From Sphaerodactylus townsendi (taxonomy: Eukaryota), in NCBI RefSeq assembly GCF_021028975.2, contig NC_059434.1, positions 88,908,001 through 88,972,000 of the forward strand: DNA of 64,000 nucleotides. The letters are read 5' to 3'. Position numbers and translations under genes: made by a program. Positions 95 through 56,160 of this stretch are shown here, piece after piece (position 1 is the first letter of the stretch; every line of letters begins with the position of its first letter). The notes below the pieces were generated by a model. The model did no database searches and was not told the origin of the DNA. It saw only the letters and a program-made list of their open reading frames with translations.

Positions 95-1453
95 CTGTGG
101 GAAGAGAGAGGCAGATGTCAGAACCTGAAAAAGACCACTGGTCACCTGGCCACAGGTACAGGGAGCTCAGATGCTGCTGAACAAGGAAGAGGCCAGTGAC
201 CGAATACAGTTGTGGGGTACCTGCAAGCCGCCCCAAGATAGCGGATGCCCTAGTTCTGACCCAACTGGGGAAAGAAGTGATTAAAGATTTCCCAAACGTA
301 GCACAAAATGCTCAGGCAACCTTCTCAGGGGCAGCAGTGGCGTAGGAGATTAAGAGCTCCTGTATCTAATCTGGAGGAACCGGTTTTGATTCCCAGCTCT
401 GCCGCCTGAGCTGTGGAGGCTTATCTGGGGAAGTCAGATTAGCCTGCGCACTCCCACACACGCCAGCTGGGTGACCTTGGGCTAGTCACAGCTTCTCGGA
501 GCTCTCTCAGCCCCACCCACCTCACAGGGGGGAAGGGCAAGGAGATTGTCAGCCCCTTTGAGTCTCCTGCAGGAGAGAAAGGGGGGCTATAAATCCAAAA
601 CTCTCTTCTCTTTTTTCTCTTTTGCAGGAAAGAGACAGGACGTGGCGCCAAAACAGGCACATGTGCAGGGTGGTGCTGGGTGAACCTAAGACCTATTCTG
701 GGGACCCGCTCCCCCACTGGGGTTCTACTCACTGCGTTGCAAGAGGTCAGCAAGTTAATGACGTTGTGGTCGAAGTGCGTGACGTGGTTGGCTATGTAGA
801 CGCGGGCCCGGAGGCCCCGCTGCCGTGGCTGGCTCTGCCGCACCAGGAGGCCCAGCACCGAGCACATCACCCGCACCACGAACCTGGAAGAGGTGCACGC
901 CTCAAGCACGCCCGCCTACCTGTGCGCCCGCCACGCTGCCTCTGCGCAATCGCGACCCCGCCCCCCTCCCACGACCTGCCACCCACAGCCTGGGGGGGGG
1001 GCGCGGTTTCCCTGGCGGAGTCCCCCCCCCGCCCCGCGTTCCTGGCCCGCCTCCTCCGCGCGGCCGGGTTGGCTGCAGCGACAGCCCCGGCCAGACCCCC
1101 CCCCCTTGCGGGGCGGCCACTGACCTGCGGAGGGCGCTGTCCGGGAGGGCGCAGCTGACCAGGAAGACGTGGAGGCCGACGAAGAGGCGCAGCAGCAGCA
1201 GGCACAGCCCCACCGGCGCGTACAGCAGCAGCGACACCAGCAGCAGCCCGTCGCTCGGCAGCCTGCGAAAGGAGGGAGGGGGGGAGGGAGGGAGGGGTTG
1301 GCGGCGGCGGCGGCGGAGAGCGGGAGGGGGGCCCCGGGGCGGGGGGCGGGGGGCGAGGGGGGCTCACCGGTGCGCGTCGAAGAGGCGGTCGGCGCCCGGC
1401 GGGGGCGGCGCGGCGGCGGCGCCGGCGGCGTCGGGGGTCGGGGCGGCCTCCAT
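1..1453 (-). CDS. AUP1: AUP1 lipid droplet regulating VLDL assembly factor (ancient ubiquitous protein 1), 5' part; exons 1453-1368, 1262-1125, 883-733, 94-<1
   Basis: Spliced translation [87 protein letters not shown]...NHVTHFDHNVINLL...-PMLNGASGFLCWSRGFLE matches the AUP1 N-terminal hairpin and acyltransferase-like region; all introns GT-AG with consistent phases. Confidence 0.95.
331..610 (+). mobile_element. tRNA-derived squamate SINE (Squam3-like)
   Basis: tRNA-like head (agtggcgtagg...ggttttgattccc), gctgggtgaccttgggctagtcaca core, ataaatccaaa...ctcttct tail; several related copies in the window. Confidence 0.75.
733..883 (-). CDS. AUP1: AUP1 exon 3
   Basis: cttccag acceptor; NHVTHFDHN motif; donor gtgagt. 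Confidence 0.93.
1125..1262 (-). CDS. AUP1: AUP1 exon 2
   Basis: tttcgcag acceptor; LLLYAPVGLCLLLLRLF; donor gtcagt. Confidence 0.93.
1368..1453 (-). CDS. AUP1: AUP1 exon 1
   Basis: ATG at 1453; ends RLFDAHR; donor gtgagc. Confidence 0.9.
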
Positions 1454-1667
1454 GGCTGCGCCGCTCCGTCCTCCCTTCAGGGCCCGGCCGAGGCCCGCGC
1501 AGCCCCAGCCGCCATCCTGGCCGCGCTTGCGCAGACGAGAGCTCGTTGCCTCTCGGGCTGGCCGGAAGTCGGCCGGCCTTTCCCAGCGACCACCGCGCGG
1601 CAGAGCCGCCCGGAACGCCAAGTCCCGCAGGGGACTTCCGGCCGCGGGAGGCGGGGGGGGGGGGAAG
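1454..1667. promoter_or_regulatory. AUP1/HTRA2 bidirectional promoter within a CpG island (~780-2170)
   Basis: Only 214 bp between the divergent ATGs; ETS/GABPA motifs CCGGAAGT (1562-1569) and ACTTCCGG (1634-1641); YY1-type AAGATGGCGGC overlapping the HTRA2 ATG; very high CpG density. Confidence 0.85.
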
Positions 1668-1948
1668 ATGGCGGCGGCGGCGGCAGGGCGGGCTGTGCGG
1701 GTGGCGCTGGCGGGGGGCGGGCGTCGGTGGCGCTGGCGGGGGGCCGGCTGGGCCTGGGCCTTGGCGGGCGCGGGAGGAGGAGCCGCGGCGGCGGCGGGGG
1801 CGCTGCTGCTGGGCGGGGCGGAGGCGGCGGCGGCGGCGGAGGAGGGGGGGAGGGGAGGCCCCGCCTCCCCCCGCGCCACCTTTAACTTCATCGCCGACGT
1901 GGCCGAGAAGACGGCGCCGGCGCTGGTCTACGTGGAGATCCTGGGCAG
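1668..1948 (+). CDS. HTRA2: HTRA2 exon 1
   Basis: aagATGg; ...[30 protein letters not shown]; donor gtgagg. Confidence 0.9.
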
Positions 1949-4900
1949 GTGAGGCCCCTCCTCCTCTCGCAGCGGGGGCGGGGGCTTCACAGGCCGGCCT
2001 TCCCCGTGGGGGGACCCACCGCGGTCCCCATCGAGAGGAATAACGGCAGCCACGAATGTAAAATGCATCCGCGCAACAGCCGTTTCCCCGCGCCCTACGC
2101 AATAGGTGGGAAGGAACATCCTTCCTCACAACAACCCTGTGGGGTAGGCTTGGCTGAGCGAGGGGGGGGGCTCGGCTCCTGCAGCTAAGTCTGCCGAGCA
2201 GACCACGGATTTGTTAAGCCCTCCCCTCCCTCATGTTTCCCACTTACGGGAAGAACGTTGATTTGAAATGTGGCGTTGGAGGCGAGCTTTATGGATTCCA
2301 CGTTGATCAGACTATGAGTGCAATTGGGGAGGGGGGGGTAGAATTGTGGATGCAGCACAAGGGCCCACTGACACCCGTTCCTGTAACATCTGCGAAAGGG
2401 GCAACTGTGCCCATCGTGGGGGCAGATATGCCAGTGCTTTGCAGCACCTGAACGCAGAATCTGCCACTGCTCTGGGGCTTCTCTGCCAGAAGGGCCCACA
2501 TCTGCATGGGTGGCCAGTTCTGGGAGGTGACGACTGACACCCTGGAAATGACCAGCTGCCATAACCTAGGCCATCAAAATAGCAAGAATGCGCCCTTGCG
2601 GCAGAAGGGTGACTTGGGGTCTTCTGCTCGGTTTTGGATCTTTCACCTTCTCTGCATCTCTCCACTGCCGGCACCATCCTCGGCTGCTGCAAAATTGTCC
2701 CCCATCCCAACCCAAGGAAGAAAGTGTGCTTGCCTTCTTGGTGGCCTCCCTCAGGGCCTAGAGAGGCAGGTCCCTTCCTGCCCTGGACGGGTGTTCCTCT
2801 GTGAGGCGCTGCTTTTCTGCAGCCGCTCTCCTGCCTGTGCAGCCTGGAAGAGAGCCATTTGCTGGGCTGCTCCAGCTGAGAAGCACACAGTTGGAAGGGG
2901 CCAGCCAGTCAGTGCAGGATCAGCCTCGCATCCCAGACAAGTGTTTGTCCAGCTGCTGCTTCAGGACTGCCAGTGAGCGGGAGCTCACCCCCTCCCAGGG
3001 TGGCTGATCCCACTTTTGCACAACTCTTACAGTGATTCCCCCCCCCCCCCCCAATATCCAATTGGAACCTTTCTCCCTGTAATTTACATCCTTGCATAGT
3101 GCGGGGTTGTGCGTTTGGAGCATATGACTGCCTGTCGCCTTCTCCTGTTGTCCCCAGGCATCCGTTCTCAGGGCGAGAGTTGCCCATCTCCAATGGTTCT
3201 GGTTTCGTGGTGTCTGCAGACGGCTTGATTGTGACAAACGCCCACGTTGTGGCAAACCGCAGGCGAGTGAGGGTGCGCCTGGCCAGTGGGGAGCTCTACA
3301 ATGCTGTTGTGCGGCAGGTGGACCAAGTCGCTGACATCGCCACCATCAAGATAGATCCCAAGGTGCTTTACTCAAGCGAAGCCGGGGGGGGGGGTGTCTC
3401 CCAACCCCCCTGTTGTCCTAGGCTGGGGCAGGAAGCTGGGGCAGTGCAAAGCCACACACACAGAATCTGGGTTGCACGGATGCCTCAAGAAGCGGCACCA
3501 GGAGGCTTCAAACTGCATGCAACGTTGGAAGGCAGCCCTTCCAGGAACAAACTAATCGGGTGGCACTACACTGTGTTGCTCCATAGTGCGCCCCCTGGAA
3601 TCCCTCTTTTGTTTCAGGTCGCTGCTGCAGCAGTTGGGGTGGGGGCATTAGCCGAAGGCAGCTGCAACCACAGATGCTTGCTTGTTCCTCTCTCCTCAGC
3701 GCCCCCTGCCCACCTTGCCCTTGGGTCGCTCGTCAGAGGTGCGCCAGGGGGAATTTGTGGTCGCCATGGGCAGCCCTTTTGCCCTCCAGAACACTGTCAC
3801 ATCCGGCATCGTTAGCTCAGTCCAGCGAGGAGGGCGAGAACTGGGCCTGGCTGCTTCTGACATGGAGTACATCCAGACAGACGCTGCCATAGACGTAAGG
3901 ACCCCATGCCTTATATGGACCTCTCTGGGGTTTTCGCTATGGCCTGCCTGTGGGCATTGCATCTGCAGAACGTGAGGGGCTTGGGCCCTCTTTGCATGGT
4001 TGGGTTTGTTTGGATTTATATCCCCACTTTCTGTCCTGTAAGGAGACTCAAAAGGCTGACAAGCTCCTTTCCCCTCCTCTCCCCACAACAGACACCTGGT
4101 GAGGCAGGTGGGGCTGAGAGAGTTCAGAGAGAACTGCAGCTAGTCCAAGGTCACCCAGCAGGAATGTGTGGGAATGGAGAAATGAATCTGGTTCACCAGA
4201 TAAGACTCCTCTGCTCATGTGGAGGAGTAGTAAATCAAACCCGGTTCTCCAGATTAGAGTCCACCTGCTCTTGACCGCCTTACCATTCTGGACACAGCCC
4301 TCAGTGCACTTAGAAACATGGAGCTGGAAGAGCCTCAAGGGTCAACCAGTCCCACCCTCTGCCTAACATAGGAAATTCACAGCTACCTCCCCCCACCCCT
4401 AGTGAACCCTGCTTTATGCCTAGAGGATGGCATAGGACAGTGGTGGCGAACTTTTGGCACTCCAGATGTTATGGACTACAATTCCCATCAGCTCCTACAA
4501 TTGGCCATGTTGGCAGGGGCTGATGGGAATTGTAGTCCATAACATCTGGAGTGCCAGAGGTTCGCCACCACAGGCATAGGATCTCTGGCCAATTCCTCCC
4601 TGACCCCAAAGTGGAGTTATCCTGGGCATGTAAGAAGGGACCACGAGAGCTGAGCACTGGCTCCCCCTGTCCTGCCCTCCCTCTCATGGTCTGCCTGAGT
4701 TCACAGAGTCAGCCTTGCTACGGGTGGCTGCCTGGCCTCTGCTTAAAGCTCTCCAAAGAAGGAGAGCCCCCCACCTCCTGAGGAAGCCTCCTCCACTGTT
4801 AGGGTGTTCTTCCTGATGTTTAACCAAAAACTCATTTGATTTAATTTCAACCCGTTGGTTCTGGTCTGACCTTCTGGCGCAACAAAAAACAACTCTGCCC

Positions 4901-10902: not shown

Positions 10903-10976
10903 CTACACAACTTGGTTGTTCAGCTGTCCGGGATACTGTTCCAAGCGCCTGCTGGCCTCCTCGCTGAGTGCATCAC
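10903..10976 (-). CDS. LOXL3: LOXL3 exon 14 (last coding)
   Basis: [23 protein letters not shown]. Confidence 0.92.
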
Positions 10977-13900
10977 CTGCAGGGGGACCACAGGAGAGGG
11001 TCAGCCACTCTTAGCCCCAACGGCTCCCCTTCTCCCACCTGGGGCTCTAGCCTGGTCCCCCCCCCCCCCGAGGCCCCAGTGTCTCTTCTGTGCCCCCAAC
11101 CCTCTCCCTTGGGCCGGGAGGCCGCCTAGCAGCTGGGCCCTACCGATGTGGCAGCTGTGCACCCAGATGCGGTGGCCGTCGTACTTGCAGCTGCACTTCA
11201 TGGCGTTGTTGGTGAAGTCGCTCTCTGCCACCTCGTTCTGGGGGTTGATCACCACCTGGGGAACATCAGCCAGCGCTCAGAGGGACCCCCAAGGCCCCCC
11301 CCCCACACCTGCTGCCCATGGCTGGGCTCAGAACCCCTGCCTGACCTGCAGAAGCCTTCCCTCCACCCCACAGCCAGGCAGCAGTCTGAGTGAAACCACC
11401 CCCTTCCAGATGCTGAGCCAGAGAAGGCAAGGGACTGCTGGAGGGCCCCCCCCACTCCTCTGCTTCCCCAGTGAAAGGTGGTCTGGGGGTCAAAGGAGAT
11501 CAGCCCCAGGGAGGAGGGCGCCTTTGGGGCTGTGGGAAAAACAGGCTGTTGGGCCAGGGGCACCTCTGCTCTCAAGGCAGCCTGAGCACCCCAGGCCGTT
11601 TCTCCAGACTGACCCCCCCCCCTCTGAATGGCAAAGCCCAAGCGGCTGGTGGGGAAACTCCGTGCACCCCCCCCCCCCCGCTGATCCTGCTGGGGGTGGA
11701 GAAGGAGCCCCCTCCTGCCGCCCGCCTTCCGGCTCACGGGGCTCCAGGGGTCCCGCTTGACTCTGCAGTGGCTGACCTGCAGAATGTAATTCCCGGGCCG
11801 GACGTCTGTGATGTCGATCCACTGGCAGTCAATGTCGTGCCGGTAGAGGTCCCAGCAGCCCACGGTGATGCCCTGCTCCCCAAAATTGGCACACTCGTAC
11901 CGCTTGCCCACATCTGTCAGAGGAAAGGACCAGGGGTGGGGGAGAAACGGGCATCAGGTTTTGCCTCTGGCTTTCCGCTTTCTCCAGTCATGACCACGTG
12001 GGGCCCAGGCAAGCGGCTTCACAGCTGTGGCAAGGAGGGAGCTCTTTAGGGCAGGCTTCTTTCCACACCTGGTCTGAAAGGGCCCAGGGGGCTCTCCCAA
12101 TGCAGCCCCTCCCTGGCCACCCTGCCCAGCCAGCCAGCCCTCCCTCACCCACCTTCCTGGCACTCCGTGTCTTCCAGGCAGAAGCTGGCCTTGTGTCCCT
12201 CGGCCACCTTGGTGCCGTTGGGCGTGAGGAGGTCATAGTGGGTAAAGATGTCCATGCTGTGGTAGTGCCTGGGGCGGGGAGGGGAGTCCAGGATCAGAGT
12301 GGGGAAGGCCCTCCCATCCTCCTTGTGGTCACTAGTTCAGCTGAGCTCTGCTCAGTCTCCGGCGTGTCCAGGGCACCACTGCCACCCTCCTCGTAGCACT
12401 CCTTACCCGTGGCACTCGTGCCACACCCAAGAGTGGCGCCCTGCCTTGGGACGGAAGTCTGCCCGGCCATTGTTGTGAATCTGGGAAGAGAAACGCAGGA
12501 GGCGCCGGTGCCCGTAGGGCCAGTTGGCTTTGCGGGCACTGCTTGACAGGCAGTTCTCCTCTGCAGCACAGTAGAGCATGTGTAGAGGGCGATCCTCAAT
12601 GTATGCCGTCTCTTGCACCAACGGAGCATGGAGCAGCAAGTCGGAGGCAGCTGCAGGGAGGCAATGGAGCAGGGATTGCTGCAGGAGGCCAAAAGGGCGC
12701 TCTGCAGAGGTGCCTCTGCAGGAAAGGCAAAAGGGGGGGGCAAAGGCCTGGCTGGCTGGCTGGCAGGAGGACACCCAAAAGTCAGCCTCAGCCGGCTTCT
12801 GCCCTCATGGATCCCAAAGGCCAGAGCAGAGATGGGACGGGAGCCCAGAATGCCTCCAACCGGCCTGCAGCCCGCCCTGGGGAGGCCCAGCGTCCGACCC
12901 CCCAACCACAAAGCTCACTCTCAGAGCAGATGACCCCAGCAGCAAAGCGGGGGCCCGTCTTGCGGCAGGTGAGGGTGTCGTGGCGCTGGCAGTGGCTCAA
13001 CGTCATCTCGTGGCCCGCACACTTCACACCGCTCAGCACCATCTCTGTCACGTTGCTGGCATCCCAGTACCAGGTCTCCTTGGAAAGACAGCACACCACA
13101 GCCCGGTCAGGGGAGTGACCCACGCCTCCCCCCACCCCATTTCTCCCTCTCCCCCGACATGTCGTGAGCAGTGTTCGGCATCAGCATGCAAACATGCATT
13201 TCCTGTTGCAAGTTGCTGGCACCGCTCCCCTCCCAAGCCCTCCCCCTGCCCCTTCCATGCGTCCTGCTGGCTACAGACCGCACACGCTGGCCCTCCACCT
13301 ACCGTCACAGCATGCATGGCATAGCCAAGGCCGAGCTGCCGACATGCCACCATGGCTTCTGTGGTGCTCCAGCCCGAGCTGCAAACCGTGCCCCACCTAC
13401 CAGCGTGTTTCACCTCCAGGCGACCCTCAAACACCGTGCGGCCACCGACCATCCGGATCTGTGGAGAAGCCCTGCAGGGAATGAGCCTGCGTGCCCCCCC
13501 TGCCCCGCCCGGGTCCCCACAGAGGCAGAGGGATGCAGGCAGCGCAGCGCAGAGGGCAGCCCAGCAGCCAAGAGCTTAGCCCGGAAGCCCGCTCGGGAGC
13601 CACGCGAGTGCAGGCAGGCATCGGGTACCTCCACTTGCTCTCTAGTAAGCCGCTGCTGGCGTAAGCCCCAGTGCTCCAGCTGGCGATCGCACGCCACCGT
13701 GGCTCTCCAGGGGTCTCCCCAGCCTCTGCGCCACCAGATCCAAGCTCCCACCGGGCTGGGTGAGACCTCGTTAAGCTCCCAGCCCCCCGGGCCACCTCAA
13801 CCCGCCCCTCAAAGCGGTTGCGGCCCATGCTGAGGCGGATCTGTGGAGAAAGGGAGTGGCAGAGGGGGGGGGATCAGGGTCTCTGGGGAGCCAGCAGCTC

Positions 13901-16900
13901 CTACTGGGGAAGCCCCCTCTGCCACTGGGCCCCTCAAACAACACCCCCCCCCCTGCGTGCGCACACATTTCCCCGGGGAGCTCCTCTCCCCTCACACCCA
14001 GCCTGAGGCTTTCCAATCCGCTGTCTTCTTGGCCTGTCTGGTCTAAGCAAGCCCACCCCCCAAACTCCTCCCTCAACAGAGGCCCAAGGTTTTTGCCCAG
14101 TGTGTGCCCCACTTGGAGGCAGCCTAGGAACTACACAGGGGGCAGAGCTGGACCCACAAGGGTTGGTGTTCCAGGCATTTCCCCCTTCCTCTGACAGCTG
14201 GTCACACAAGGGCAGGAAGAACTGGGGGGGGGGGGCGCAGGCAGGCAAGCAGGACAGGCTACTGCACGGTGGGGGAGTGGGTCTGGACCTTCAACTGCAG
14301 CACAGGTGCCCCCGGCAGTGACTCAAGCAGGGCTGATGAAACCCCATCTGCGGCCCTCTGTTCCCCTCTTCCATGCCCACTTGCTTGTGCCAACAGGGGC
14401 TGGCAAACACCCTTGGCCCGGGGTGCGTGGGTGGGCAGCCGTGCTTGACCCTGAGGCCAAACTTCAGGTTACATTTGGCACCAGTTGAACCAACTGCCCC
14501 CTCCCTCGGCCACTGTGGTCTGAGAAAACGGCCTGGGGAAAAGCCTGGCCCCCTCCCCCGCACACATGCAGCATGGTCCGGAGCCCAACAGGGCCTGGCG
14601 CACCACTGGACCAGACTCTCCTGGTGTCCCCACTGGCGGTGCAGACACCAGACTCGAGCCAGGAGGCTCCCGGCAGGCCCCGTGTGGTTCCTCCAGATGC
14701 CAGCCCAACTATCCGCGCAGCAGCCATTTCTCCCTCCCCCTCCCATCCCTCCGGCAGCATCTGCTGCCCACAGCGTGGGTCAGTCGGCCGTCTCATAATG
14801 CCCTGCAAAGGAGGTTCTCCGATTCCCAGCCCTCTCTGGGCCCTTCTGTGGCAGAGATTTTGTGCCTTCCCATTTATAGGTAGAGTGGCTTTTTTTAAAA
14901 ACGACGACAACTGGTGTTGCAGAGATGTTGATATTGTGATATTGTAACAGTATCCAGTTGCTGATTAAAGAACCTGGAAAAGTTCCTGTGGCCCCCGGGG
15001 TGGGGTGGGGTGGGGGCCTGGAGCAGGGACCTCACCCCCCCCACCCCGACCCCTGTGTCAAACCCTCCTCCTCCTCACAGCACAGCCTGGGCAGGGCAGG
15101 GAAACCACAACCGTGGGTCCAAACTCCAGTTCCTCCTGAGGGCCAGACACAAAGGTTTTGGGGGGCCAGGGTGAGAGACGCGCACTTTGAAGGACTGGTT
15201 CTGGGGGGCACGTGGGCCCAGTCCCCCCCCCACACACACCCTCCACAAAGCCAATTTCTTCTTCTGCAGGCAAACGCCCGCTTGACCCCAGCCAGGGCCT
15301 GGCCCTCCACGGCTCCCCCCAGCCTGCCCCGGGGTTTTCATCCCTGGTTGGAGGAGGAGTAGAAACAGGGCTCCACCCGACACCCCAAAGCAGCAGCACC
15401 TCTTCTCCTGTGCCCCCCGCCCTTGAACGGCCCCCCAGATTCCCCACTTCACATGAGGAGGGCGACCTCTTGGCAGGGGGTGGGGGTGGGGGGCTGCAGA
15501 TCTGGAAATGCCAGAGATCCGTTTCCCTGGAGAAAATGGCAGCTTTGGACAGCAAACTCTCGGGCGTTCCCCCCCCCCCCACTGAAGCCCCCCACCCCCT
15601 CCTCAGGCTCCACCCCAAACTCTCCCGGTATCTCCCAACCTAGACTTGGCAATCCTCCCTCTTGGGGAAGGGGGGGGCAGCAGCAGCAGCCGAGGTGGAG
15701 CTACTTTGGGGCTGGGGGCTGCCTCCATCCGCACCTTGCTGGAGCCACTCCAAGAGGAGGACTGCCCGGGTCCTGGGCCCAGCTGGGCAGGGGAGACCAG
15801 CCCCCAGCTCAGCAGGCTGCAGGCGAGTGGGGGCCCTTCCTCCAGGGGGGCAGGAAGAGGCGGGGCCCCTGCCCAGGGTTGTGCGTGGCCCAGCTAACCG
15901 TGGTCTCGTAGCCCATGTAGGGGATGTTGCAGCGGACACCGGCGTCCTCCGAGTGCTTGCAGTCCTCCTGGGTGATGTTCTTGTGTGGGCAGCTCCACAG
16001 CGACTTCTCAGAGCCGGCACACTGCACCTCGTTCATGTGGACGGGGCCCATCCCTGCCGGGGAGAGAGGAAAGAGGAGAGGCTCCCAAGAAGCCCACCAC
16101 TTCCAACTCCATCAGGGCAGCTGGCAGGCCGGGTCACTTACAAGGCGGCTGTGCACCCAGCCGGGCCTCCCTCCCTCCCCCAAGGGCAGGGTCTCGGGGA
16201 GCAGGGGTCCTTCACGACCTCCTCCAACCTGACCCTTTCCATCAGCAATGCCGGGGATTTAACTGTATGGGGGCCAAGAAGACGCTCTACTACTGAGCCA
16301 CCCAGCCCCAGGCAGTCACCGTGTCTTATAACCGGTGGGTTGGAGCCGGCAGGCCAGGGCCGGGGCTCATTCGCAGGAAAGCCAGGACGACTCTTCAGAA
16401 CAGGGAAAAACTTGGTGTGGGGAGGGGGGTGGGGGGTTAAGCTCCCACCCCCAGCCTTGTGGCTCAGAGTGGCGCGTGCCAGCCAGACTCACCTTGGCCC
16501 ATGCGTGCCCCCGTCAGGGCCTCCTTGGCGCTGCCAAAGCCCAGCTCCCGGCAAGCGACGCTGGCTGACATCAGGTTCCAGCGGTCATCGCAGACGGTGC
16601 CCCATTCGTTGTTCTTGAGCACCTCCACCCGCCCTTCGCCAGGCCTGGCCCCGCCCTTCAGTCGGATGCGCTTCTGCGGGCAAGACCGGGAAGTTCAGGG
16701 CCCTGGGGACAGAGGCTGCCCCCCCCCCCGCCCTCACCTAAGACCGGGGTGGGCTCACCTGCCCCTGCCGCTGCTGCCGCTGCCTCTTCTGGGCATTGCC
16801 TGTGGCAAAGAGGGGCCCCAGCACACAGCCCACCACCACGGGCATCCCGCCCTTGCAGGCGCCAGTGGCGTTGCCCCTGTAGAACTGGGAGGAGCACAGG

Positions 16901-19900
16901 GAGAGGTGGGCCTCGTTCCCCAGGCAGGACACGGAGTGCAGCCGGTAGTTCAGCGGGTGTCGCTGCGCATACAGCCTGCAAGGAAAAGGGCCGGTCAGGA
17001 GGCGGGGAGGGAAGCGGAGCTGGCCGGGGAACTCTCCTTTGCACTGAGGCCTGGCATTCGGACCCCCGTGCCCCAAGAGACGCTCACTTGAGGAATGGAG
17101 ACGACCCAGGGACGGGGAGGCTCAGCAGGCACCTCTCAGCCCAGGAAACAGCACCGCACCAGAGCCCTAACAGGGCCAGGAAGGTCCTGGGGCCACCCCC
17201 TCAGCTCAGGTGCAGATCCACCAGGCCCCACACCACCACGCGGGAGCTGGGAACTCTGGAGGCCTAGCAAGGGCGGGGGGCGGGGCTTCAGCTGCTCCTC
17301 TGCTGAACAGCCTCCAGCTGTCCTCGAGCGGCTCCTCTGCAGAGCGGCCTGAGGGCCCTCCTGGCTGCACACCTCCCAGGGGGCAGCGGGGCTCACGTTA
17401 CCTCTTGACACCTCTAAAGCCTTCCCTGCGCCTATGCCGGGGCTGAGCCCTGGGGGCTGGCCTGGAAAACAGAAGCGAACAGTGAAGGAGCCCCCCAAGG
17501 GCCCCTCCCCTCCCCCATCTGCAAGCATCTCCCCAAACCCCTTTGCTGGCCCAGCTCTGCCCGCTCGACGCAAGCCCCCTGGCTGGATGAGACCCGTGCC
17601 TTTTGCCCCCAGCCTGCTGTGTCTAACACTGGCCAGCCAGAGACTCCCCTCACCAGGTGCCAAGGAGGGCACGGAGGCGGCCTCAGCCCAGGCACCTGCC
17701 TCCCTGCCCCGCCCCCCTGGCACTCCCAGGCCCCTCGCGCTGCCCCCGCCCAGAGCATTTTTCCACACTTAGTCGTGGGAATTCATTTTGCACTCCGAGC
17801 AGTTTCCCTCTTGGTTTCTCCAAGCATACCGCTCAGGACAGAAGATCTGGCCCTCAGCCCTTGCCCGATTCCTTAGCTGAAGGACCTCCCCCCCCCCCCC
17901 CAAAAAGTGCCACTGCGCAAGCAGGTGCTGTTTGTACACCTGCAAAGGCTCGGGGGAGGGGGCACCATGCTGCACACCTAATCAGACTCACAACAACTTT
18001 AAAGCCCACCGAGAGCCCCACGGCCTCGGTCACGAGCATTTTGGCTCTCATGAGGGCTCCAGTCCATGAAGTATCCGAGCCTCAAACTGCCTGTTTTTTG
18101 CAGTCCAGATGAGCACACAGATGTGTTTACGTGGGGCTGCTGCACCTCATCACTGCTGAGATGTCCCACGTGGCACGAGAAGTAGTTCATGGGCCACCAT
18201 CCAGTGCAGCCGCCCAGAGGGGACAGGAGCCGTTCAAACCCCTCCTAGCGCCAAAGTTGTCATTTTTAGTACCAACTGTAACTTTTGTATAAAACTTTGT
18301 GGGTTGCCTTGAGTGCAGCAGGGGCTGGGAGAAAAGCGGGGAATGAAGCGAACTGCGGGGTCTCCCCTGCCTCCAACTGTGCCTCTGCTCCAACAGCTGC
18401 CTTCTGTCCACCTCCCGGGAATGGAAAGCCAGCGGCTGTGGCCACATCTGACGTGGCAGTCCATGTAGCACGGAGGACTCCCTTGTGCCTGTCTTAACCC
18501 CACTTGGCCTGTGACTTCATCAGGTCTAGAAAATCCCTCTCACCGTTTGGGATGTTAAGAACATGTCACACCTGAGACATCACGGTGTGTGCCTAGAAGG
18601 AAAAGGGTTGGCGGAAAAGCCACTGAGGTCTGGCTGCAGGCCTCTGGCAGCCTCCTGGCCGGAGGGAGGTCGCCCACTGAGGCTGAGGTGGTCCCTGGCA
18701 CTAAGCTGTCCCTCTCGGCCGTCTCCACAGCCAGTCAGCACGCAGTGCCGGAGGGTGAGTCATCCCCCCTCCCAACGGCCCGGGAGAGGCCCCTGCACAG
18801 TGTCGCCTTTGTCTGGAAGCTCTTTCCAGACTCCCATTCATGTCTGTCGGGTTCTCGCACTCACCTGCTGACCCACCCCACTGCCTGCCCCTCCATTCCT
18901 TGCTTGTTCCTCCCCATTCACACCCTCTGGCAGCTGGCCAGATCTGGTCCCCAACTGGGGTGAAAGGAACCAGCTGGCCGGCAAAGTTCAGCCTCCCCTG
19001 ACCCTACACGTGGCCTCCTGCCGAGGATGCTACCAGCGGCGGCGGGGCTCCTCTTCCGTCCTGTTTCTGAATGGCCTGCCCTCTTCCTCCTCAGCACTGC
19101 GTGGCCGGCCTGCCACTTGCCTCTCCACACAGGACAGGCTGGCCTGCTCACTGCTGGGCCCTCGGCTGCCACGGAGGCAGGCCAGCCGGCCATCATCTCA
19201 TAAGAACACACGGGGACAGCTAGCCGGCTGCTGGCAGATTCGCCCCTCCTGGGAGGGTTAAACAAGACTATTACCTATGACTCTCCAAGAGAGGGAGGTG
19301 CCAGCAGAGAGGGGAAACCTTGTTGGCCAGAGAATGAGCAGAGATGGGCTGCTGGAAGCTCCTGGGCCAAATGGAGGCTGGGGGCGGGGCGAGGGAGGAA
19401 CACCTGGAATTCTGTGCCCAGTTCTGGGCACCACAATTCAAGAAGGATATTGACATGCTGGAACGGGTCATTGATCAAAGGTCTGGAATCCATAGATTAT
19501 GAAGAGAGGCTTAGGGAGCTGGGGATGTTTAGTCTGGAGAAGAGAAGGTTAAGGGGGGTGGGTGGGACATGATCGCTATGTTTAAATATTTGAAGGGATG
19601 TTGGTGAGGGAGCAAGCTTGTTTTCTGCTGCTCCAGAGACTAGGACAATGAGCGATGGATTCCAGGTGCAGGAAAAGAGATTCCACCTAAACATCAGGAA
19701 GAACTTTGTGACCGTCAGGGCTGTTAGACAGTGGAATGCGCTACCCTGGAGTGTGGTGGAGTCTGGAGGTTTTTAAACAGAGGCTGGATGGTCATTTGTC
19801 AGGAGTTCTGTAATTATGTGTTCCTGCATTCCAGGGGGTTGGACTTGATGGCCCAGGACAGATTATTAACTGGACCAGACGCCATGACAGCCAGCAGCTT

Positions 19901-22900
19901 TGCCCCCCCCCCCCCCTCGCCCCAGAACTGTCCCAGTCAAACCGGTACATATGATAAGCCTACTGTTATGGAGAGAAGCATTGGATTAATCCTGCCCCAC
20001 ACCAGCGATTCCTTTGCACAGCTGGCAATTAGACACAGCCACAGGTGGGGAATAGAAAGCCCCTCAAAACAGACCCTCCCCCTCCCCAAAAGACCGCGGG
20101 CCCTGGCCCCTCCTGGGCCGAAACAGGCCTGCCACAGGGCTGGGTGGCACAGAGAGGTTGCCAGCAGCAGAAAGGCCACCCGCAGCCCCCACCCCAGCTT
20201 TGCAGGCGGCCCGAGAGGCAGAGAGGAAGCGGCAGCCCCGATCCCAAGCAGGTCAGCGGCGCCCTGGGCTTCCCGGATGAACCTCACTCCTCCCAAGCCA
20301 AAGGGGAGCAGCTGGGCGGCCGGCCGGCCGGCCTGCCCCCCCGAAGGAGGCCCAGCATGCAGGGCGGGGGGCTTGGGGCGGAAGTTCATCCTGTGTTCTT
20401 GGCTGGATTTCAAGCCACTCGATCCAGCCCGGATGGTTCTGCCCGCTGGGCAGCTTGGGCCCATCCCACAGAGAAGCCTCAGGGGGGTCTGGCGTTACCA
20501 GGGGGCACTGGCAGCCCAACACTGCAGGGCCCGCCTGGCCCTGTTACCTCCTCCTGCCCAGGCCTGCCTTCCTCCTGCCCTTCGTCGCCTTGGCTGCTCG
20601 CTTGAACCGCCTGGAAAAGTCAGCAGGAGCTTCTTAAGGGGGAGGCGGCAGCTGGGCCCTCAGTTGGGATCCCAAGAGTCTCACAGTGGGAGTCCACAGA
20701 CCGGCTCTCCCTGCGATGCCCCACGCGAGCCCCCTTCCTTCCACAGAACGCCACTTCCAGGCTCTTGACCCTGAGCCGGCCACTAGAGTTGGGGGGGGGG
20801 GCTTTCAAATGGTGTGGGGCCCAATTGAAAACAGTGTTCCTCCTGCTGCCTGCAATCCCCCCCGCCCCCCCGTGTCCTGCGTGTCGGGCGTAGTTTGCTC
20901 GGAGCTGAGCCCTCGGCACACAGAGGCTGGAGAGGGGCTGCTTCAAATCAAGACAGGCTGAGCCCCCCCCCCCCCCCCCGCTAGTTAGTCAGGCTGTCTT
21001 TCCAGCACGCAATGGGTGTGGGCTGCTGCTATTCTCTACGTGGCAAAAGCTCCTCTGTAGCCCCCCCACCCCGCCCAGGATACTTGAGCCTCCCCCAAGA
21101 GGGCTGTTTCAGGCAGAGAGGGCCCGGGGCCTCCTCACCCGGCCTGGGGCTGCAGTTCCAGCTGGGCCACCTCCTCTCCCGGGCCCTTTCTTCCCCTATG
21201 CCCTGGGGGCCAGGTCTCCCCCCTGCTTGGCCGTGAAGCCTCGGTGGCCATGGAGCAGGCACGTCCTCCCTCTCTGTGCCTACCTCGCTGAGTTGTTGTG
21301 AAGATGAGACCGAGGGGGAGGGCCACTCGCACAGAGCTGAGCTCACTCTGGGGACAGCGTGGCCACGTCAGCCTCATCAGGATGCTGGGCCCGCCCCCCC
21401 CCCCGCCCCGCCCCCCCCGCCCCAGACCAGGGGTCTTCCGTGAGGGCCTGACTCACCTGTAAAAATTCCGGTTAACCTTTTTCTCAGCAGGGAAGCCCAG
21501 CAGGCCACACACGACCCGGCTGTTCTGGCTGCTCCAGTTCTCGTCACAAATTTGGGCCCAGCTGTTCTTGTAGCGGACTTCCACGATGCCCTCCGTCACT
21601 GGCAGCGGCCGCTTTGCATGGGACACGACTGGGCGCAGCCGCAGCTCCTCCACCTGGCTCTGCTCTGTCTGGGGGAGGGGAAAGGGTCAGCCCCGTCCAC
21701 GCCTGCCTCAGCCAGGGATGCCAACCCAGCTGGCACCTGGGGAGGATCCCCGGAATGATAGCTCCTAGTCTCCAAACACAGGTTAGATTCCCCGGAGAAA
21801 ATGGAGAGGGCAGGGCTCTGTGGCACAGAGCCCCACTGAGGCCCCCGTTCCCCCCACGCCCCATCCCCAAATCCCAGGAGTGTTGGCAACCAGACCCCCA
21901 CCAGCCTTGGCTCTCGTTGCATAGGCCTCCTGCAGCCCCCCCTCCCCATCTCCCCTCGACTCAACACATTGGTTGGAGCAGACAACTTTGGGCTGTCCCT
22001 GCCGTGGGCCCAGGCCAAGCGGGAGGAAGTCTTGCTACTCCTGAACAAGCCCAACTCTGCTTTGCCGGGCTGCAGCCCCACACAAGGCTGGGAGGGGAAC
22101 CCCCCCCACCTCACACACACACACACAGGGTTTCCATGGCTTCAAGTGGGAAACTGGGAGGGGGCTGTGGCAGAAGCCCAAGATAGATTGAGAGGCAGAG
22201 GAAGGCCCCACTTGGAAGGCCCCGCACCTGCCTGGCACCGGCCACTCCCATGGATACCCCCAAGGTGGAAGAAACGGCTTCAACTGGCAAAGGCAATCCA
22301 GTGGAAGGACGTCCACACATTACCTGCATGACGCCCGCACACCCCTGAACGGCCCAGGAGGACTTTTTGCAAAGCTTAGAGGGCACAGAAAGACGCTTGG
22401 CAAGAGGACAGGGACTCTGGGGCGGAGTAGTGCATAGTTAGGGTTACCAGATCTGGGTTGGAAAATACCTGGGGATTTTGGGGGCGAGACCCAAAAGGGT
22501 GAGCTGGGGGAAGAAGGGCCTTCTGTGAGGCATAATGCCTTAGAGTCCACCTGCCAATGGGGCTGTTTTCGCCAGTCGCAACCTGGAGGTTGGCAACTCT
22601 GTTCATACCACTTGCTGCAGACAACCTGACCTTGAGGTAGGTGCCGAGTTAATACTGCAGTTCTGTATTGGTTGGTCCCAGATTTCTGCTTTCTAAATCC
22701 TGCTGCAACATTACTGGGTATGTCTGACGGCCCATCCTGATTCAGCTGCATTACCCACATTTTGCCTCGGTGAAAAAGCCCAACCTCAAAGGATGTAAAT
22801 ACATTTTTCTTTTAAAATTGCCCACAACCTCTCTATGAAGTACAGAAAAACAGCTGGTGGCAGCCTGGGGGCCCACGGTTGGTCCCACTCCTGACCTTGG

Positions 22901-55409: not shown

Positions 55410-56160
55410 NNNNNNNNNNNNNNNNNNNNNNNNNNNNNNNNNNNNNNNNNNNNNNNNNNNNNNNNNNNNNNNNNNNNNNNNNNNNNNNNNNNNNNNNNNN
55501 NNNNNNNNNNNNNNNNNNNNNNNNNNNNNNNNNNNNNNNNNNNNNNNNNNNNNNNNNNNNNNNNNNNNNNNNNNNNNNNNNNNCCTGAAGAAGTTACCCC
55601 GGACTTACAGGGGTTAGAGTCATGAGCATGCATGCACANNNNNNNNNNNNNNNNNNNNNNNNNNNNNNNNNNNNNNNNNNNNNNNNNNNNNNNNNNNNNN
55701 NNNNNNNNNNNNNNNNNNNNNNNNNNNNNNNNNNNNNNNNNNNNNNNNNNNNNNNNNNNNNNNNNNNNNNNNNNNNNNNAACTAGCTTACTGTGGTAGAG
55801 GAACTGCAAAGTGTCGTCCTGGCTCACTTCAGACTCTCTCCCTTGAAAAAATCAGAGGGCAGAGTAAATTTTGGGGCCATGCTCAGGAGAATGGAACTGT
55901 CACGGCAAGGTTTGGGAAGACTGCTGGTCCTGAGAATAAAGGTTAAAGGACATGAAGGGCTTTGCATGTTTGGGTTTTCTGTATTTTTAAGTACTCTATT
56001 TTGTTTTATTTTGTTNNNNNNNNNNNNNNNNNNNNNNNNNNNNNNNNNNNNNNNNNNNNNNNNNNNNNNNNNNNNNNNNNNNNNNNNNNNNNNNNNNNNN
56101 NNNNNNNNNNNNNNNNNNNNNNNNNNNNNNNNNNNNNNNNNNNNNNNNNNNNNNNNNNNN
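55410..56160. other. Three assembly gaps (55410-55583, 55639-55779, 56016-56160)
   Basis: N runs. Confidence 0.99.

What the first reader, a model, noticed from the sequence alone, without database searches (positions are those of the whole stretch)
13303..13850. Hidden tandem paralogous exon: probable mutually exclusive exon pair that switches LOXL3 SRCR domain 4
Seen in sequence: two exon-like units lie ~180 nt apart with the same acceptor (ttctccacag|ATC CG). Both begin the same SRCR half-domain in phase 0. Unit 8B (13458-13303) is intact: [52 protein letters not shown]. Unit 8A (from 13840) reads [21 protein letters not shown]... and then appears to degenerate. Deleting 16 bases (13 single bases plus one GAT), with no substitutions, gives [32 protein letters not shown]. 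From memory, human LOXL3 has [32 protein letters not shown] here, so 8A is the mammalian-type exon and 8B is a diverged paralog with a shorter loop. I also recall bird LOXL3 gene models containing both segments; this is unverified. Inference: each unit supplies half a domain that exon 9 completes, so including both would leave an orphan half-domain. The pair should therefore be mutually exclusive, swapping the SRCR domain next to the catalytic domain and possibly changing substrate or partner choice. Mammals may have lost 8B.
Basis: partly seen in the sequence, partly recalled or inferred. Interest (0 to 1): 0.85.

Follow-up and report, generated by a model that had tools for sequence, protein, structure and literature searches.

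The report
Ancient alternative exon pair in LOXL3
The collagen cross-linking gene LOXL3 carries two neighbouring versions of one exon, a pair that dates back to the common ancestor of sharks and bony vertebrates and that mammals have halved; in this window one version is intact and the other is garbled, most likely by a local assembly error.

Summary
LOXL3 lies on the minus strand. Two exon-8-like units sit about 380 nt apart, start to start, and share the same 15-nt acceptor junction. Unit 8B (13458-13303) is intact. Unit 8A (from 13840) is LOXL3-like only after about 16-25 extra letters are removed.

The pair is not peculiar to this genome. A passerine-like genomic contig, a teleost contig and an elephant-shark model all carry both units intact and in tandem. 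In a tree, the 8A and 8B classes separate, and each class contains both shark and bony-vertebrate sequences. 8B evolves under purifying selection (dN/dS 0.09), like exon 9.

Transcripts and gene models join exon 7 to 8B (bird RNA contig, salmonid-like contig, frogs, tinamous, Zonotrichia, a gecko isoform) or to 8A (mammals, Ficedula, teleost loxl3b, sharks). Some fish models include both. A tinamou locus lacks 8A and a porpoise locus lacks 8B.

The damage to 8A consists only of insertions, with no excess of substitutions. A related species' contig lacks about 44 letters at exactly that place. I read this as an unpolished assembly patch (about 80%) rather than decay.

No RNA run exists for this species, so exclusive use is inferred here, not shown. 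I found no paper describing the pair.

The parts
15899..16053 (-). LOXL3 exon 7 (second half of SRCR3). It ends in phase 0 with ..MGYETT|gt.
   Evidence: tblastn with bird and gecko LOXL3 proteins; boundaries read.
13910..13930 (-). Intron-7 element (core CAGTGGCAGAGGGGG) complementary both to the tract just upstream of 8A and to a tract upstream of 8B. Candidate docking site; a lead only.
   Evidence: Inverted repeats I3 (14 nt, 100%) and I4 (13 nt, 92%). Duplex energies -35.7 and -34.1 kcal/mol exceed all 150 dinucleotide shuffles. No such signal in the bird or teleost contigs.
13855..13868 (-). Pyrimidine tract of the 8A acceptor (ccccctctgccact), complementary to the intron-7 element.
13643..13840 (-). 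Unit 8A, the mammalian-type exon 8 (first half of SRCR4). It is clean for 21 codons (13840-13778). It is then interrupted by 16-25 extra letters and has no GT donor as assembled.
   Evidence: Orthologous intact exons: L006:1104-1277:+ and L004:214-384:+.
13566..13787 (.). Suspected unpolished assembly patch covering the 3' two thirds of 8A and the start of the following intron.
   Evidence: The depth of the one spanning contig of run X6 (28.3) falls to 22.2 and 23.2 in these two bins only. That corresponds to about 24 and 20 window letters absent from the relative; neighbouring bins show none. 20 is also the number of extra letters the bird-guided alignment places in 13677-13787.
13459..13642 (-). 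Intron between 8A and 8B (184 nt as assembled). It holds the second complementary tract at 13520-13532.
   Evidence: The homologous intron is 149 nt in L006 and 480 nt in L004.
13303..13458 (-). Unit 8B, an intact alternative first half of SRCR4. 156 nt, phase 0-0, with cag acceptor and gtaggt donor.
   Evidence: 90% identical to the 8B segment of a gecko LOXL3 isoform (P0388). dN/dS against L001 is 0.09. Confirmed letter for letter, bar one substitution, by a contig of run X5 and without gaps by X6.
12919..13078 (-). LOXL3 exon 9 (second half of SRCR4), starting in phase 0 with ETWYWD.
10903..12650 (-). LOXL3 exons 10-14 (lysyl oxidase catalytic domain): about 12407-12650, 12153-12268, 11777-11913, 11144-11255, and 10903-10976 including the stop.
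   Evidence: All are in frame, with no frameshifts.
16493..21686 (-). Upstream LOXL3 SRCR exons seen in the window: SRCR3 first half at 16493-16673, SRCR2 halves at about 16745-17000 and 21456-21671. The first exons were not located.

Best explanation
The window holds squamate LOXL3, which carries an ancient tandem duplicate of exon 8. Each copy, 8A and 8B, encodes the first half of the fourth SRCR domain, the domain next to the catalytic domain, and exon 9 encodes the second half.

The duplication predates the split of cartilaginous and bony vertebrates, and both copies have been kept as coding sequence since. A mature mRNA most likely uses one copy or the other. That gives two LOXL3 forms, which differ in a surface loop (6 residues longer in 8A, often with an N-G-T sequon) and in about 20 other positions of SRCR4.

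Lineages can manage with one copy: mammals kept only 8A and tinamous only 8B.

In this window 8B is intact and usable. The frameshifts in 8A are most likely a local patch of unpolished long-read sequence in the assembly (about 13566-13787), not a biological change.

Shown: the pair exists, it is old, both copies are under selection, exon 7|8B and exon 7|8A joins occur in other species, and single-copy losses have happened.

Inferred: strict mutual exclusion, its mechanism, use of both forms in this species, and the artefact reading of 8A.
For: Gene identity: SRCR and lysyl oxidase exons on the minus strand.

Pair intact in tandem elsewhere:
- L006, a passerine-like genomic contig, has exon 7, 8A, 8B, exon 9 and exon 10 in order.
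- L004, a teleost contig, has both units with ag/gt sites.
- The elephant-shark model P0301 reads 8A, 29 intron codons, then 8B.

Age: in the tree the A class (87/88) and the B class (95/95) are each one side of a branch, and each holds shark and bony-vertebrate rows.

Selection: dN/dS for 8B is 0.09 (window vs L001) and 0.08 (L006 vs L005), against 0.098 for exon 9. For 8A it is 0.13 (bird vs teleost) and 0.18 for the clean 63 nt of the window's 8A against the bird.

Use of one or the other:
- The bird RNA contig L007 joins exon 7 directly to 8B. P0300 is a salmonid-like spliced ORF with the same join.
- 8B-only models: frogs, tinamous, Zonotrichia, sturgeon, Salmo trutta and a gecko isoform.
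- 8A-only models: mammals, Ficedula, Athene, teleost loxl3b and sharks.
- An elephant-shark cDNA-derived protein runs from 8B into exon 9 (P0245).

Single-copy lineages: the tinamou intron 7 is 279 nt without 8A. The porpoise intron 8 is 135 nt without 8B.

Artefact reading of 8A:
- All 14 or more indel events are insertions (P about 3e-6 if insertions make up 40% of real indels).
- Amino-acid conservation is not reduced (49 of 58 identical to the bird).
- The relative's contig lacks about 44 letters exactly there and none in 8B or the adjoining intron.
- Runs X1 and X3 of organism A, the best holders of the stretch, have no contigs over 13344-13676, so short-read support there is poor.
- Other first-reader notes on this genome describe young repeats riddled with indels (unchecked).
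Against: There is no RNA evidence from this species.

As assembled, 8A lacks a GT donor. Insertions alone cannot explain that: it would also need a deletion and a substitution error, or a real mutation.

The individual indel places of the relative's contig were not listed, so the 44 missing letters could be one or two real deletions.

Several fish gene models include 8A and 8B together, and that combination stays in frame, so frame does not enforce exclusion.

Both RNA contigs with the exon 7|8B join keep the intron after 8B. A productive 7|8B|9 mRNA is therefore seen only in gene models, plus the elephant-shark sequence, which shows the 8B|9 join but not exon 7.

No single species in my data shows both isoforms.
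Confidence: 0.6

Rival explanations
1. 8A is truly inactivated in this squamate. The frameshifts and the missing donor are real, and 8B is the only, constitutive exon 8, as in tinamous and apparently frogs.
For: The window as given has no in-frame 8A and no GT donor. Loss of one copy has happened elsewhere. The only squamate protein found with this region, gecko isoform X5, uses 8B. The contig L001, which groups with the window and the gecko, has no 8A within 398 nt upstream of 8B.
Against: The mutation spectrum is not one of decay. There are 14 or more insertions, no clear deletions, no stop, and no excess of amino-acid changes. At a usual ratio of indels to substitutions, that many indels would come with saturating substitutions. 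A relative that differs by about 2% in substitutions lacks about 44 letters in exactly this patch, which is too much change for so short a time.
Confidence: 0.2
2. Both units are normally included together. Non-mammalian LOXL3 would then have one and a half SRCR4 domains, and the one-or-the-other models are annotation artefacts.
For: Models with 8A followed by 8B exist for Takifugu, Sinocyclocheilus, Cyprinus, Danionella and Acnodon. Inclusion of both keeps the reading frame.
Against: The bird RNA contig L007 and the salmonid-like P0300 join exon 7 directly to 8B and skip 8A. Many models from different pipelines carry only one unit. Lineages with a single copy exist. An SRCR fold needs one N-terminal and one C-terminal half (established knowledge of the domain). 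Most of the both-included models are unnamed or hypothetical proteins, so probably predictions without transcript support (inference).
Confidence: 0.07
3. 8B is a non-functional relic or a poison exon whose inclusion mainly yields unproductive, intron-retaining transcripts.
For: The two RNA contigs that include 8B both keep the next intron and end in a premature stop.
Against: 8B has kept exactly 52 codons and about 75% identity from elephant shark to birds. Its dN/dS is 0.08-0.09, the same as the neighbouring constitutive exon. In tinamous it is the only exon 8. A non-coding role would not preserve the protein reading frame in this way.
Confidence: 0.05

Closest known systems
Human and mammalian LOXL3 exon 8 and the described variants LOXL3-sv1 and LOXL3-sv2
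   Same: 8A is the orthologue of mammalian exon 8. It has the same position, phase and sequence type, and it contains the place where the review PMC6678131 puts a putative BMP-1 site (GDD 446-448).
   Different: The described human variants drop whole exons (1, 2, 3 and 5, or 4 and 5) and do not swap homologous exons. The mammal locus checked has no 8B at all.
Mutually exclusive exon pairs born by tandem exon duplication in vertebrates, such as FGFR2 IIIb/IIIc, PKM exons 9/10 and tropomyosin exon pairs (named from general knowledge)
   Same: Adjacent homologous exons of the same phase, each encoding the same part of a domain. Both are conserved over hundreds of millions of years, and transcripts or models carry one or the other.
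   Different: Exclusive use of the LOXL3 pair is not shown by junction counts. The pair is absent from mammals, which is probably why it is missing from the literature I could search. Inclusion of both stays in frame, so nonsense-mediated decay cannot police it.
Docking-site and selector-sequence RNA pairing, as in insect Dscam1 exon 6 and 14-3-3 zeta (named from general knowledge)
   Same: In the window, one intron-7 element is complementary to tracts upstream of each variant exon, and it can pair with only one at a time.
   Different: It was seen in this window only. The same test gave no signal in the bird or teleost contigs. The two target tracts share a pyrimidine motif, so this may be a single coincidence. 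No experiment exists.
The homologous exon of LOXL2
   Same: It encodes the same half-domain, and its loop length of 56 residues is like that of 8A.
   Different: The LOXL2 rows form their own group in the tree (95/75). No tandem second copy was looked for in LOXL2 or LOXL4.

Membership tests
LOXL3 gene (lysyl oxidase homolog 3) | SRCR domains followed by a lysyl oxidase catalytic domain, with closest identity to LOXL3 rather than LOXL2 or LOXL4. | tested here: met
   Exons for SRCR2, SRCR3 and SRCR4 and the catalytic domain lie on the minus strand. The catalytic exons are 86-98% identical to bird and gecko LOXL3. The first exons, and so SRCR1, were not located in the window.
LOXL3 gene (lysyl oxidase homolog 3) | Conserved neighbourhood (TLX2, DQX1, AUP1, HTRA2 side of the locus). 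| not tested
   Earlier first-reader notes place TLX2 and DQX1 a few kb before the window. I did not check them.
Tandem-duplicated mutually exclusive exon pair | Two adjacent exons that are homologous to each other. | tested here: met
   8A and 8B align over the whole half-domain. The frameshift-tolerant score for the window's 8A is 184, against a null maximum of 55.
Tandem-duplicated mutually exclusive exon pair | Same phase, and each exon has its own acceptor and donor. | tested here: inconclusive
   Met for 8B in the window and for both units in L006 and L004. The window's 8A has a good acceptor but frameshifts and no GT donor as assembled.
Tandem-duplicated mutually exclusive exon pair | Both copies kept under purifying selection over long times. 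| tested here: met
   dN/dS is 0.08-0.28 for 8B and 0.13-0.18 for 8A. Both classes include chondrichthyan and osteichthyan members.
Tandem-duplicated mutually exclusive exon pair | Mature transcripts contain exactly one of the two. | tested here: inconclusive
   This species: no RNA run. Other species: exon 7|8B joins in two RNA-derived contigs, and many one-or-the-other models, but also fish models with both. No junction counts.
SRCR domain, N-terminal half | Match to the SRCR profile, with the conserved EGR.E, WG..C and C.QLG positions. | tested here: met
   Precomputed PF00530 hits on the ORFs that hold the 8B orthologues. phmmer with 8B finds 16963 SRCR proteins. Motifs seen.
Docking-site / selector-sequence control of exclusive splicing | One docking element complementary to a selector upstream of each variant exon. 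| tested here: met
   Window only: -35.7 and -34.1 kcal/mol, above all 150 shuffles.
Docking-site / selector-sequence control of exclusive splicing | The pairing architecture is conserved in other species. | tested here: not met
   The bird L006 and teleost L004 contigs give values inside the shuffle range (fraction at or above observed 0.67 and 0.66).

The most novel reading that the evidence does not exclude
Non-mammalian LOXL3 is made in two forms by a roughly 450-million-year-old exclusive exon switch. An RNA docking element in intron 7 pairs with one of two selector tracts to set the switch. The two forms differ in processing or substrate reach, because the swapped half of SRCR4 carries the loop, a glycosylation sequon and the place of the putative BMP-1 cleavage site. 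On this reading mammals lost the regulatory layer when they deleted 8B.
Probability: 0.12. Interest if true: 0.75.

Novelty: new member of a known kind. Interest (0 to 1): 0.55.

Why it matters
LOXL3 is studied almost entirely in human and mouse (Stickler syndrome, cleft palate, myopia, cancer), which have only one exon 8. If most other vertebrates make two LOXL3 forms that differ in the SRCR domain beside the catalytic domain, three things follow.

First, zebrafish, frog and chick models of LOXL3 function need to say which form they study or knock out.

Second, the natural 8A/8B swap is a ready-made experiment on what SRCR4 does.

Third, many database models are probably mis-joined, among them the fish models with both exons.

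For this genome, the practical point is that the 8A region looks like a raw-read patch. Similar indel-rich oddities elsewhere in the assembly should be treated with the same suspicion.

Tried and rejected
- phmmer of the 8B peptide against 1.84 billion representatives. The list was swamped by multi-SRCR proteins ranked by summed score and said nothing about LOXL3.
- Sequencing runs.
- Read laying. It listed only the best-supported indel rows, so the individual indels of the relative's contig across 8A are not known. I could only use bin depths.
- Runs X1 and X3 have no contig over 13344-13676. The short pieces near 13716 cannot be assigned.
- The look-up of encoding contigs had no record for gecko isoform X5, Ficedula X1, Charadrius or Aquarana. 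The Bombina gene is too long to fetch. So no second squamate 8A and no frog locus could be read.
- The 398 nt upstream of 8B in L001 do not align to 8A.
- The SRR accessions of the Logan contigs occur in no paper I could search. Their organisms are therefore inferred from similarity only (passerine-like, teleost, lepidosaur-like).
- AlphaFold2 of the both-included Takifugu model with a 34-row alignment gave mean pLDDT 47 and pTM 0.25. That is too poor to say which half pairs with exon 9, so I draw no conclusion from it.
- Whole-zone duplex energies were not significant. Only the 21-nt window test was.
- The window's exons were never joined into a spliced model for any search. All searches used single exons or open frames by reference, or database proteins.
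- Human LOXL3 entries appeared among the protein hits and were listed in one batch printout. They were not fetched as DNA or searched further.
- The N runs at 55410-56160 were left alone.
Full report
**What is in the window**

The minus strand between about 10.9 and 21.7 kb carries LOXL3. Stop-to-stop frames and tblastn with bird and gecko LOXL3 proteins recover SRCR exons and all five catalytic-domain exons, every one in frame. The first exons were not located.

Exon 7 ends at 15899 and exon 9 starts at 13078, both in phase 0. Two exon-like units lie between them.

- Unit 8B (window:13303-13458:-) is 156 nt and open. It is preceded by ttctccacag and followed by gtaggt.
- Unit 8A starts at 13840 behind the same ttctccacag|ATCCG junction. 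It reads LOXL3-like for 21 codons and then drifts through all three frames.

Removing 13 single letters and one GAT restores a conserved reading.

A frameshift-tolerant alignment of the bird 8A peptide to this DNA scores 184. The maximum over 150 random window segments is 53, and over 150 shuffles 55. Which letters are removed depends on the guide peptide (19-22 singles plus two codons), so the exact count of 16 should not be over-read. As assembled, 8A also lacks a GT donor.

**The pair is old and widespread**

I searched exon by exon, by reference, and never joined the window's exons into a spliced model.

The frame around 8B found genomic ORFs from Logan assemblies. Their contigs were decisive.

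- L004, a teleost contig, has an intact 8A-type exon, a 480-nt intron, an intact 8B-type exon, and then exon 9.
- L006, a passerine-like genomic contig, has exon 7, intact 8A, a 149-nt intron, intact 8B, exon 9 and exon 10.
- The elephant-shark Ensembl model P0301 reads 8A, 29 intron codons, then 8B.

In a maximum-likelihood tree of 47 half-domain sequences, the 8A class, the 8B class and the LOXL2 exon each form one side of a branch (87/88, 95/95 and 95/75). Both LOXL3 classes contain cartilaginous and bony vertebrates. The duplication therefore predates their split.

The alignment has only 57 columns, so the order of branching among the three groups is not resolved. The window's 8B groups with the leopard gecko and with L001 (100/99), which places the window in squamates.

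The 8B class is always 52 residues long. The 8A class is 56-58 residues, with a longer loop that often carries N-G-T.

**Both copies are coding**

dN/dS for 8B is 0.09 between the window and L001 and 0.08 between the two bird loci. That equals exon 9, at 0.098. For 8A it is 0.13 between bird and teleost. For the clean first 63 nt of the window's own 8A it is 0.18 against the bird.

**How the copies are used**

Database proteins fall into three sets.

- Exon 7|8B|exon 9: four frogs, four tinamous, Zonotrichia (three Ensembl products), Charadrius, sturgeon, Nothobranchius and Salmo trutta. A leopard gecko isoform also runs from 8B into exon 9, but it starts in the intron before 8B rather than in exon 7.
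- Exon 7|8A|exon 9: all mammals, Ficedula, teleost loxl3b and sharks. The partial Athene isoform shows only the 8A|exon 9 join.
- Both in series: Takifugu, Sinocyclocheilus, Cyprinus, Danionella and Acnodon.

Two RNA-derived Logan contigs give direct joins. In L007, a bird contig, exons 1-7 are spliced, exon 7 is joined straight to 8B, and a 182-nt intron is then retained before exons 9 and 10. P0300, which is salmonid-like, has the same pattern. An elephant-shark cDNA-derived protein (P0245) runs from 8B into exon 9.

Passerines as a group therefore have both exons in the genome, and their models use either one. I did not see both isoforms in any single species.

**Reciprocal loss**

In the tinamou Eudromia (L005), intron 7 is 279 nt and leads directly to 8B, with no trace of 8A.

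In the porpoise Neophocaena (L008), exon 8 is the 8A type. Only 135 nt separate it from exon 9, and no 8B-like match exists anywhere in the 14.7-kb locus.

Each copy alone therefore suffices to build SRCR4. That fits one-or-the-other use and argues against obligatory inclusion of both.

**What happened to 8A in this window**

The damage is of one kind only: at least 14 separate insertions. There is no clear deletion, no stop, and no loss of amino-acid conservation (49 of 58 identical to the bird after clean-up). Real decay gives mostly substitutions, and more deletions than insertions. If insertions made up 40% of real indels, fourteen out of fourteen would have a probability of about 3e-6.

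Laying public contigs on 12900-16200 gives further evidence. One 1117-nt contig of a relative about 2% diverged (run X6) spans 13275-14425. Its depth of 28.3 holds over 8B and over 13455-13565. It drops to 22.2 and 23.2 in the bins 13566-13676 and 13677-13787. That means about 24 and 20 letters of the window are absent from the relative exactly there.

The bird-guided alignment independently places 20 extra letters in 13677-13787. Two genomes this close cannot differ biologically by dozens of independent indels in 220 nt.

The short-read contigs of organism A (runs X1 and X3), the best holders of the stretch, do not cover 13344-13676 at all. Polishing there would have had little to work with. 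Other first-reader notes on this genome describe young repeats that are riddled with indels (I did not check them).

Taken together, I put about 80% on a raw long-read patch and about 20% on real inactivation.

The caveats are these. The individual indels of the X6 contig were not listed, so one or two true deletions remain possible. The missing GT donor also needs more than insertion errors to explain.

**Mechanism**

SRCR4 packs next to the catalytic domain in the solved LOXL2 structure (from my own knowledge, not tested here). Exon 8 encodes its first three strands and the helix. Swapping 8A for 8B changes loop length, a sequon, and the segment where a review places a putative BMP-1 cleavage site in human LOXL3 (PMC6678131).

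How exclusion is enforced is unknown. Both-included and both-skipped transcripts stay in frame. The intron between the units (87 to 480 nt across species) is mostly too long for steric exclusion.

In the window, one intron-7 element (13910-13930) is complementary to the pyrimidine tract of the 8A acceptor (14 nt, perfect) and to a tract 62-74 nt upstream of 8B (12 of 13). The duplex energies are above all 150 shuffles. The same test is negative in the bird and teleost contigs, so this is a lead and not a finding.

An AlphaFold2 model of a both-included protein was too poor to use.

**Novelty**

Five full-text searches found no paper on alternative or duplicated exons in LOXL3. The review lists only exon-skipping variants.

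The exons are already present, unremarked, in many automatic gene models.

This is a new member of a well-known kind: alternative exons made by tandem duplication. It was overlooked because mammals lack it. Its interest is moderate. The window-specific part, the garbled 8A, is most likely an artefact.

Noticed in passing
window 15512-15660: A short interspersed repeat in LOXL3 intron 7. Summed contig depth reaches 59,000-209,000 in all four runs, with hundreds of loose ends at 15512 and 15549. It is a very high-copy element shared by organisms A, B and C.
   Followed up: no
L006:1278-1289 and L006:1583-1594: In the passerine-like contig, the 12 intron letters after the 8A donor and after the 8B donor are identical (gtaggtgccagc). 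In the window, the two acceptors share 15 identical letters. This could be gene conversion between the units or a shared splicing signal.
   Followed up: partly
L005:6248-6526: The tinamou Eudromia elegans has no 8A. Exon 7 is followed after 279 nt by 8B, the reciprocal of the mammalian loss. This comes from a short-read assembly, so a collapsed GC-rich stretch cannot be excluded.
   Followed up: partly
L007:1445-1626, and protein P0300: Both RNA-derived contigs that join exon 7 to 8B keep the intron between 8B and exon 9, which brings a premature stop. This may be slow removal of that intron, an assembly path effect, or regulated retention.
   Followed up: no
Proteins P0294, P0295, P0299, P0310, P0314: Several fish LOXL3 gene models contain 8A and 8B in series, giving one and a half SRCR4 domains. 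They are probably mis-joined predictions that should be split into two isoforms.
   Followed up: partly
window 55410-55583, 55639-55779, 56016-56160: Three runs of N (460 letters in all).
   Followed up: no
window 442-2213, minus strand: Very GC-rich open frames (about 70% G+C), including one with an acyltransferase-like NHVTHFDHN motif. This is probably the first exon of the neighbouring gene on the AUP1 side of LOXL3.
   Followed up: no
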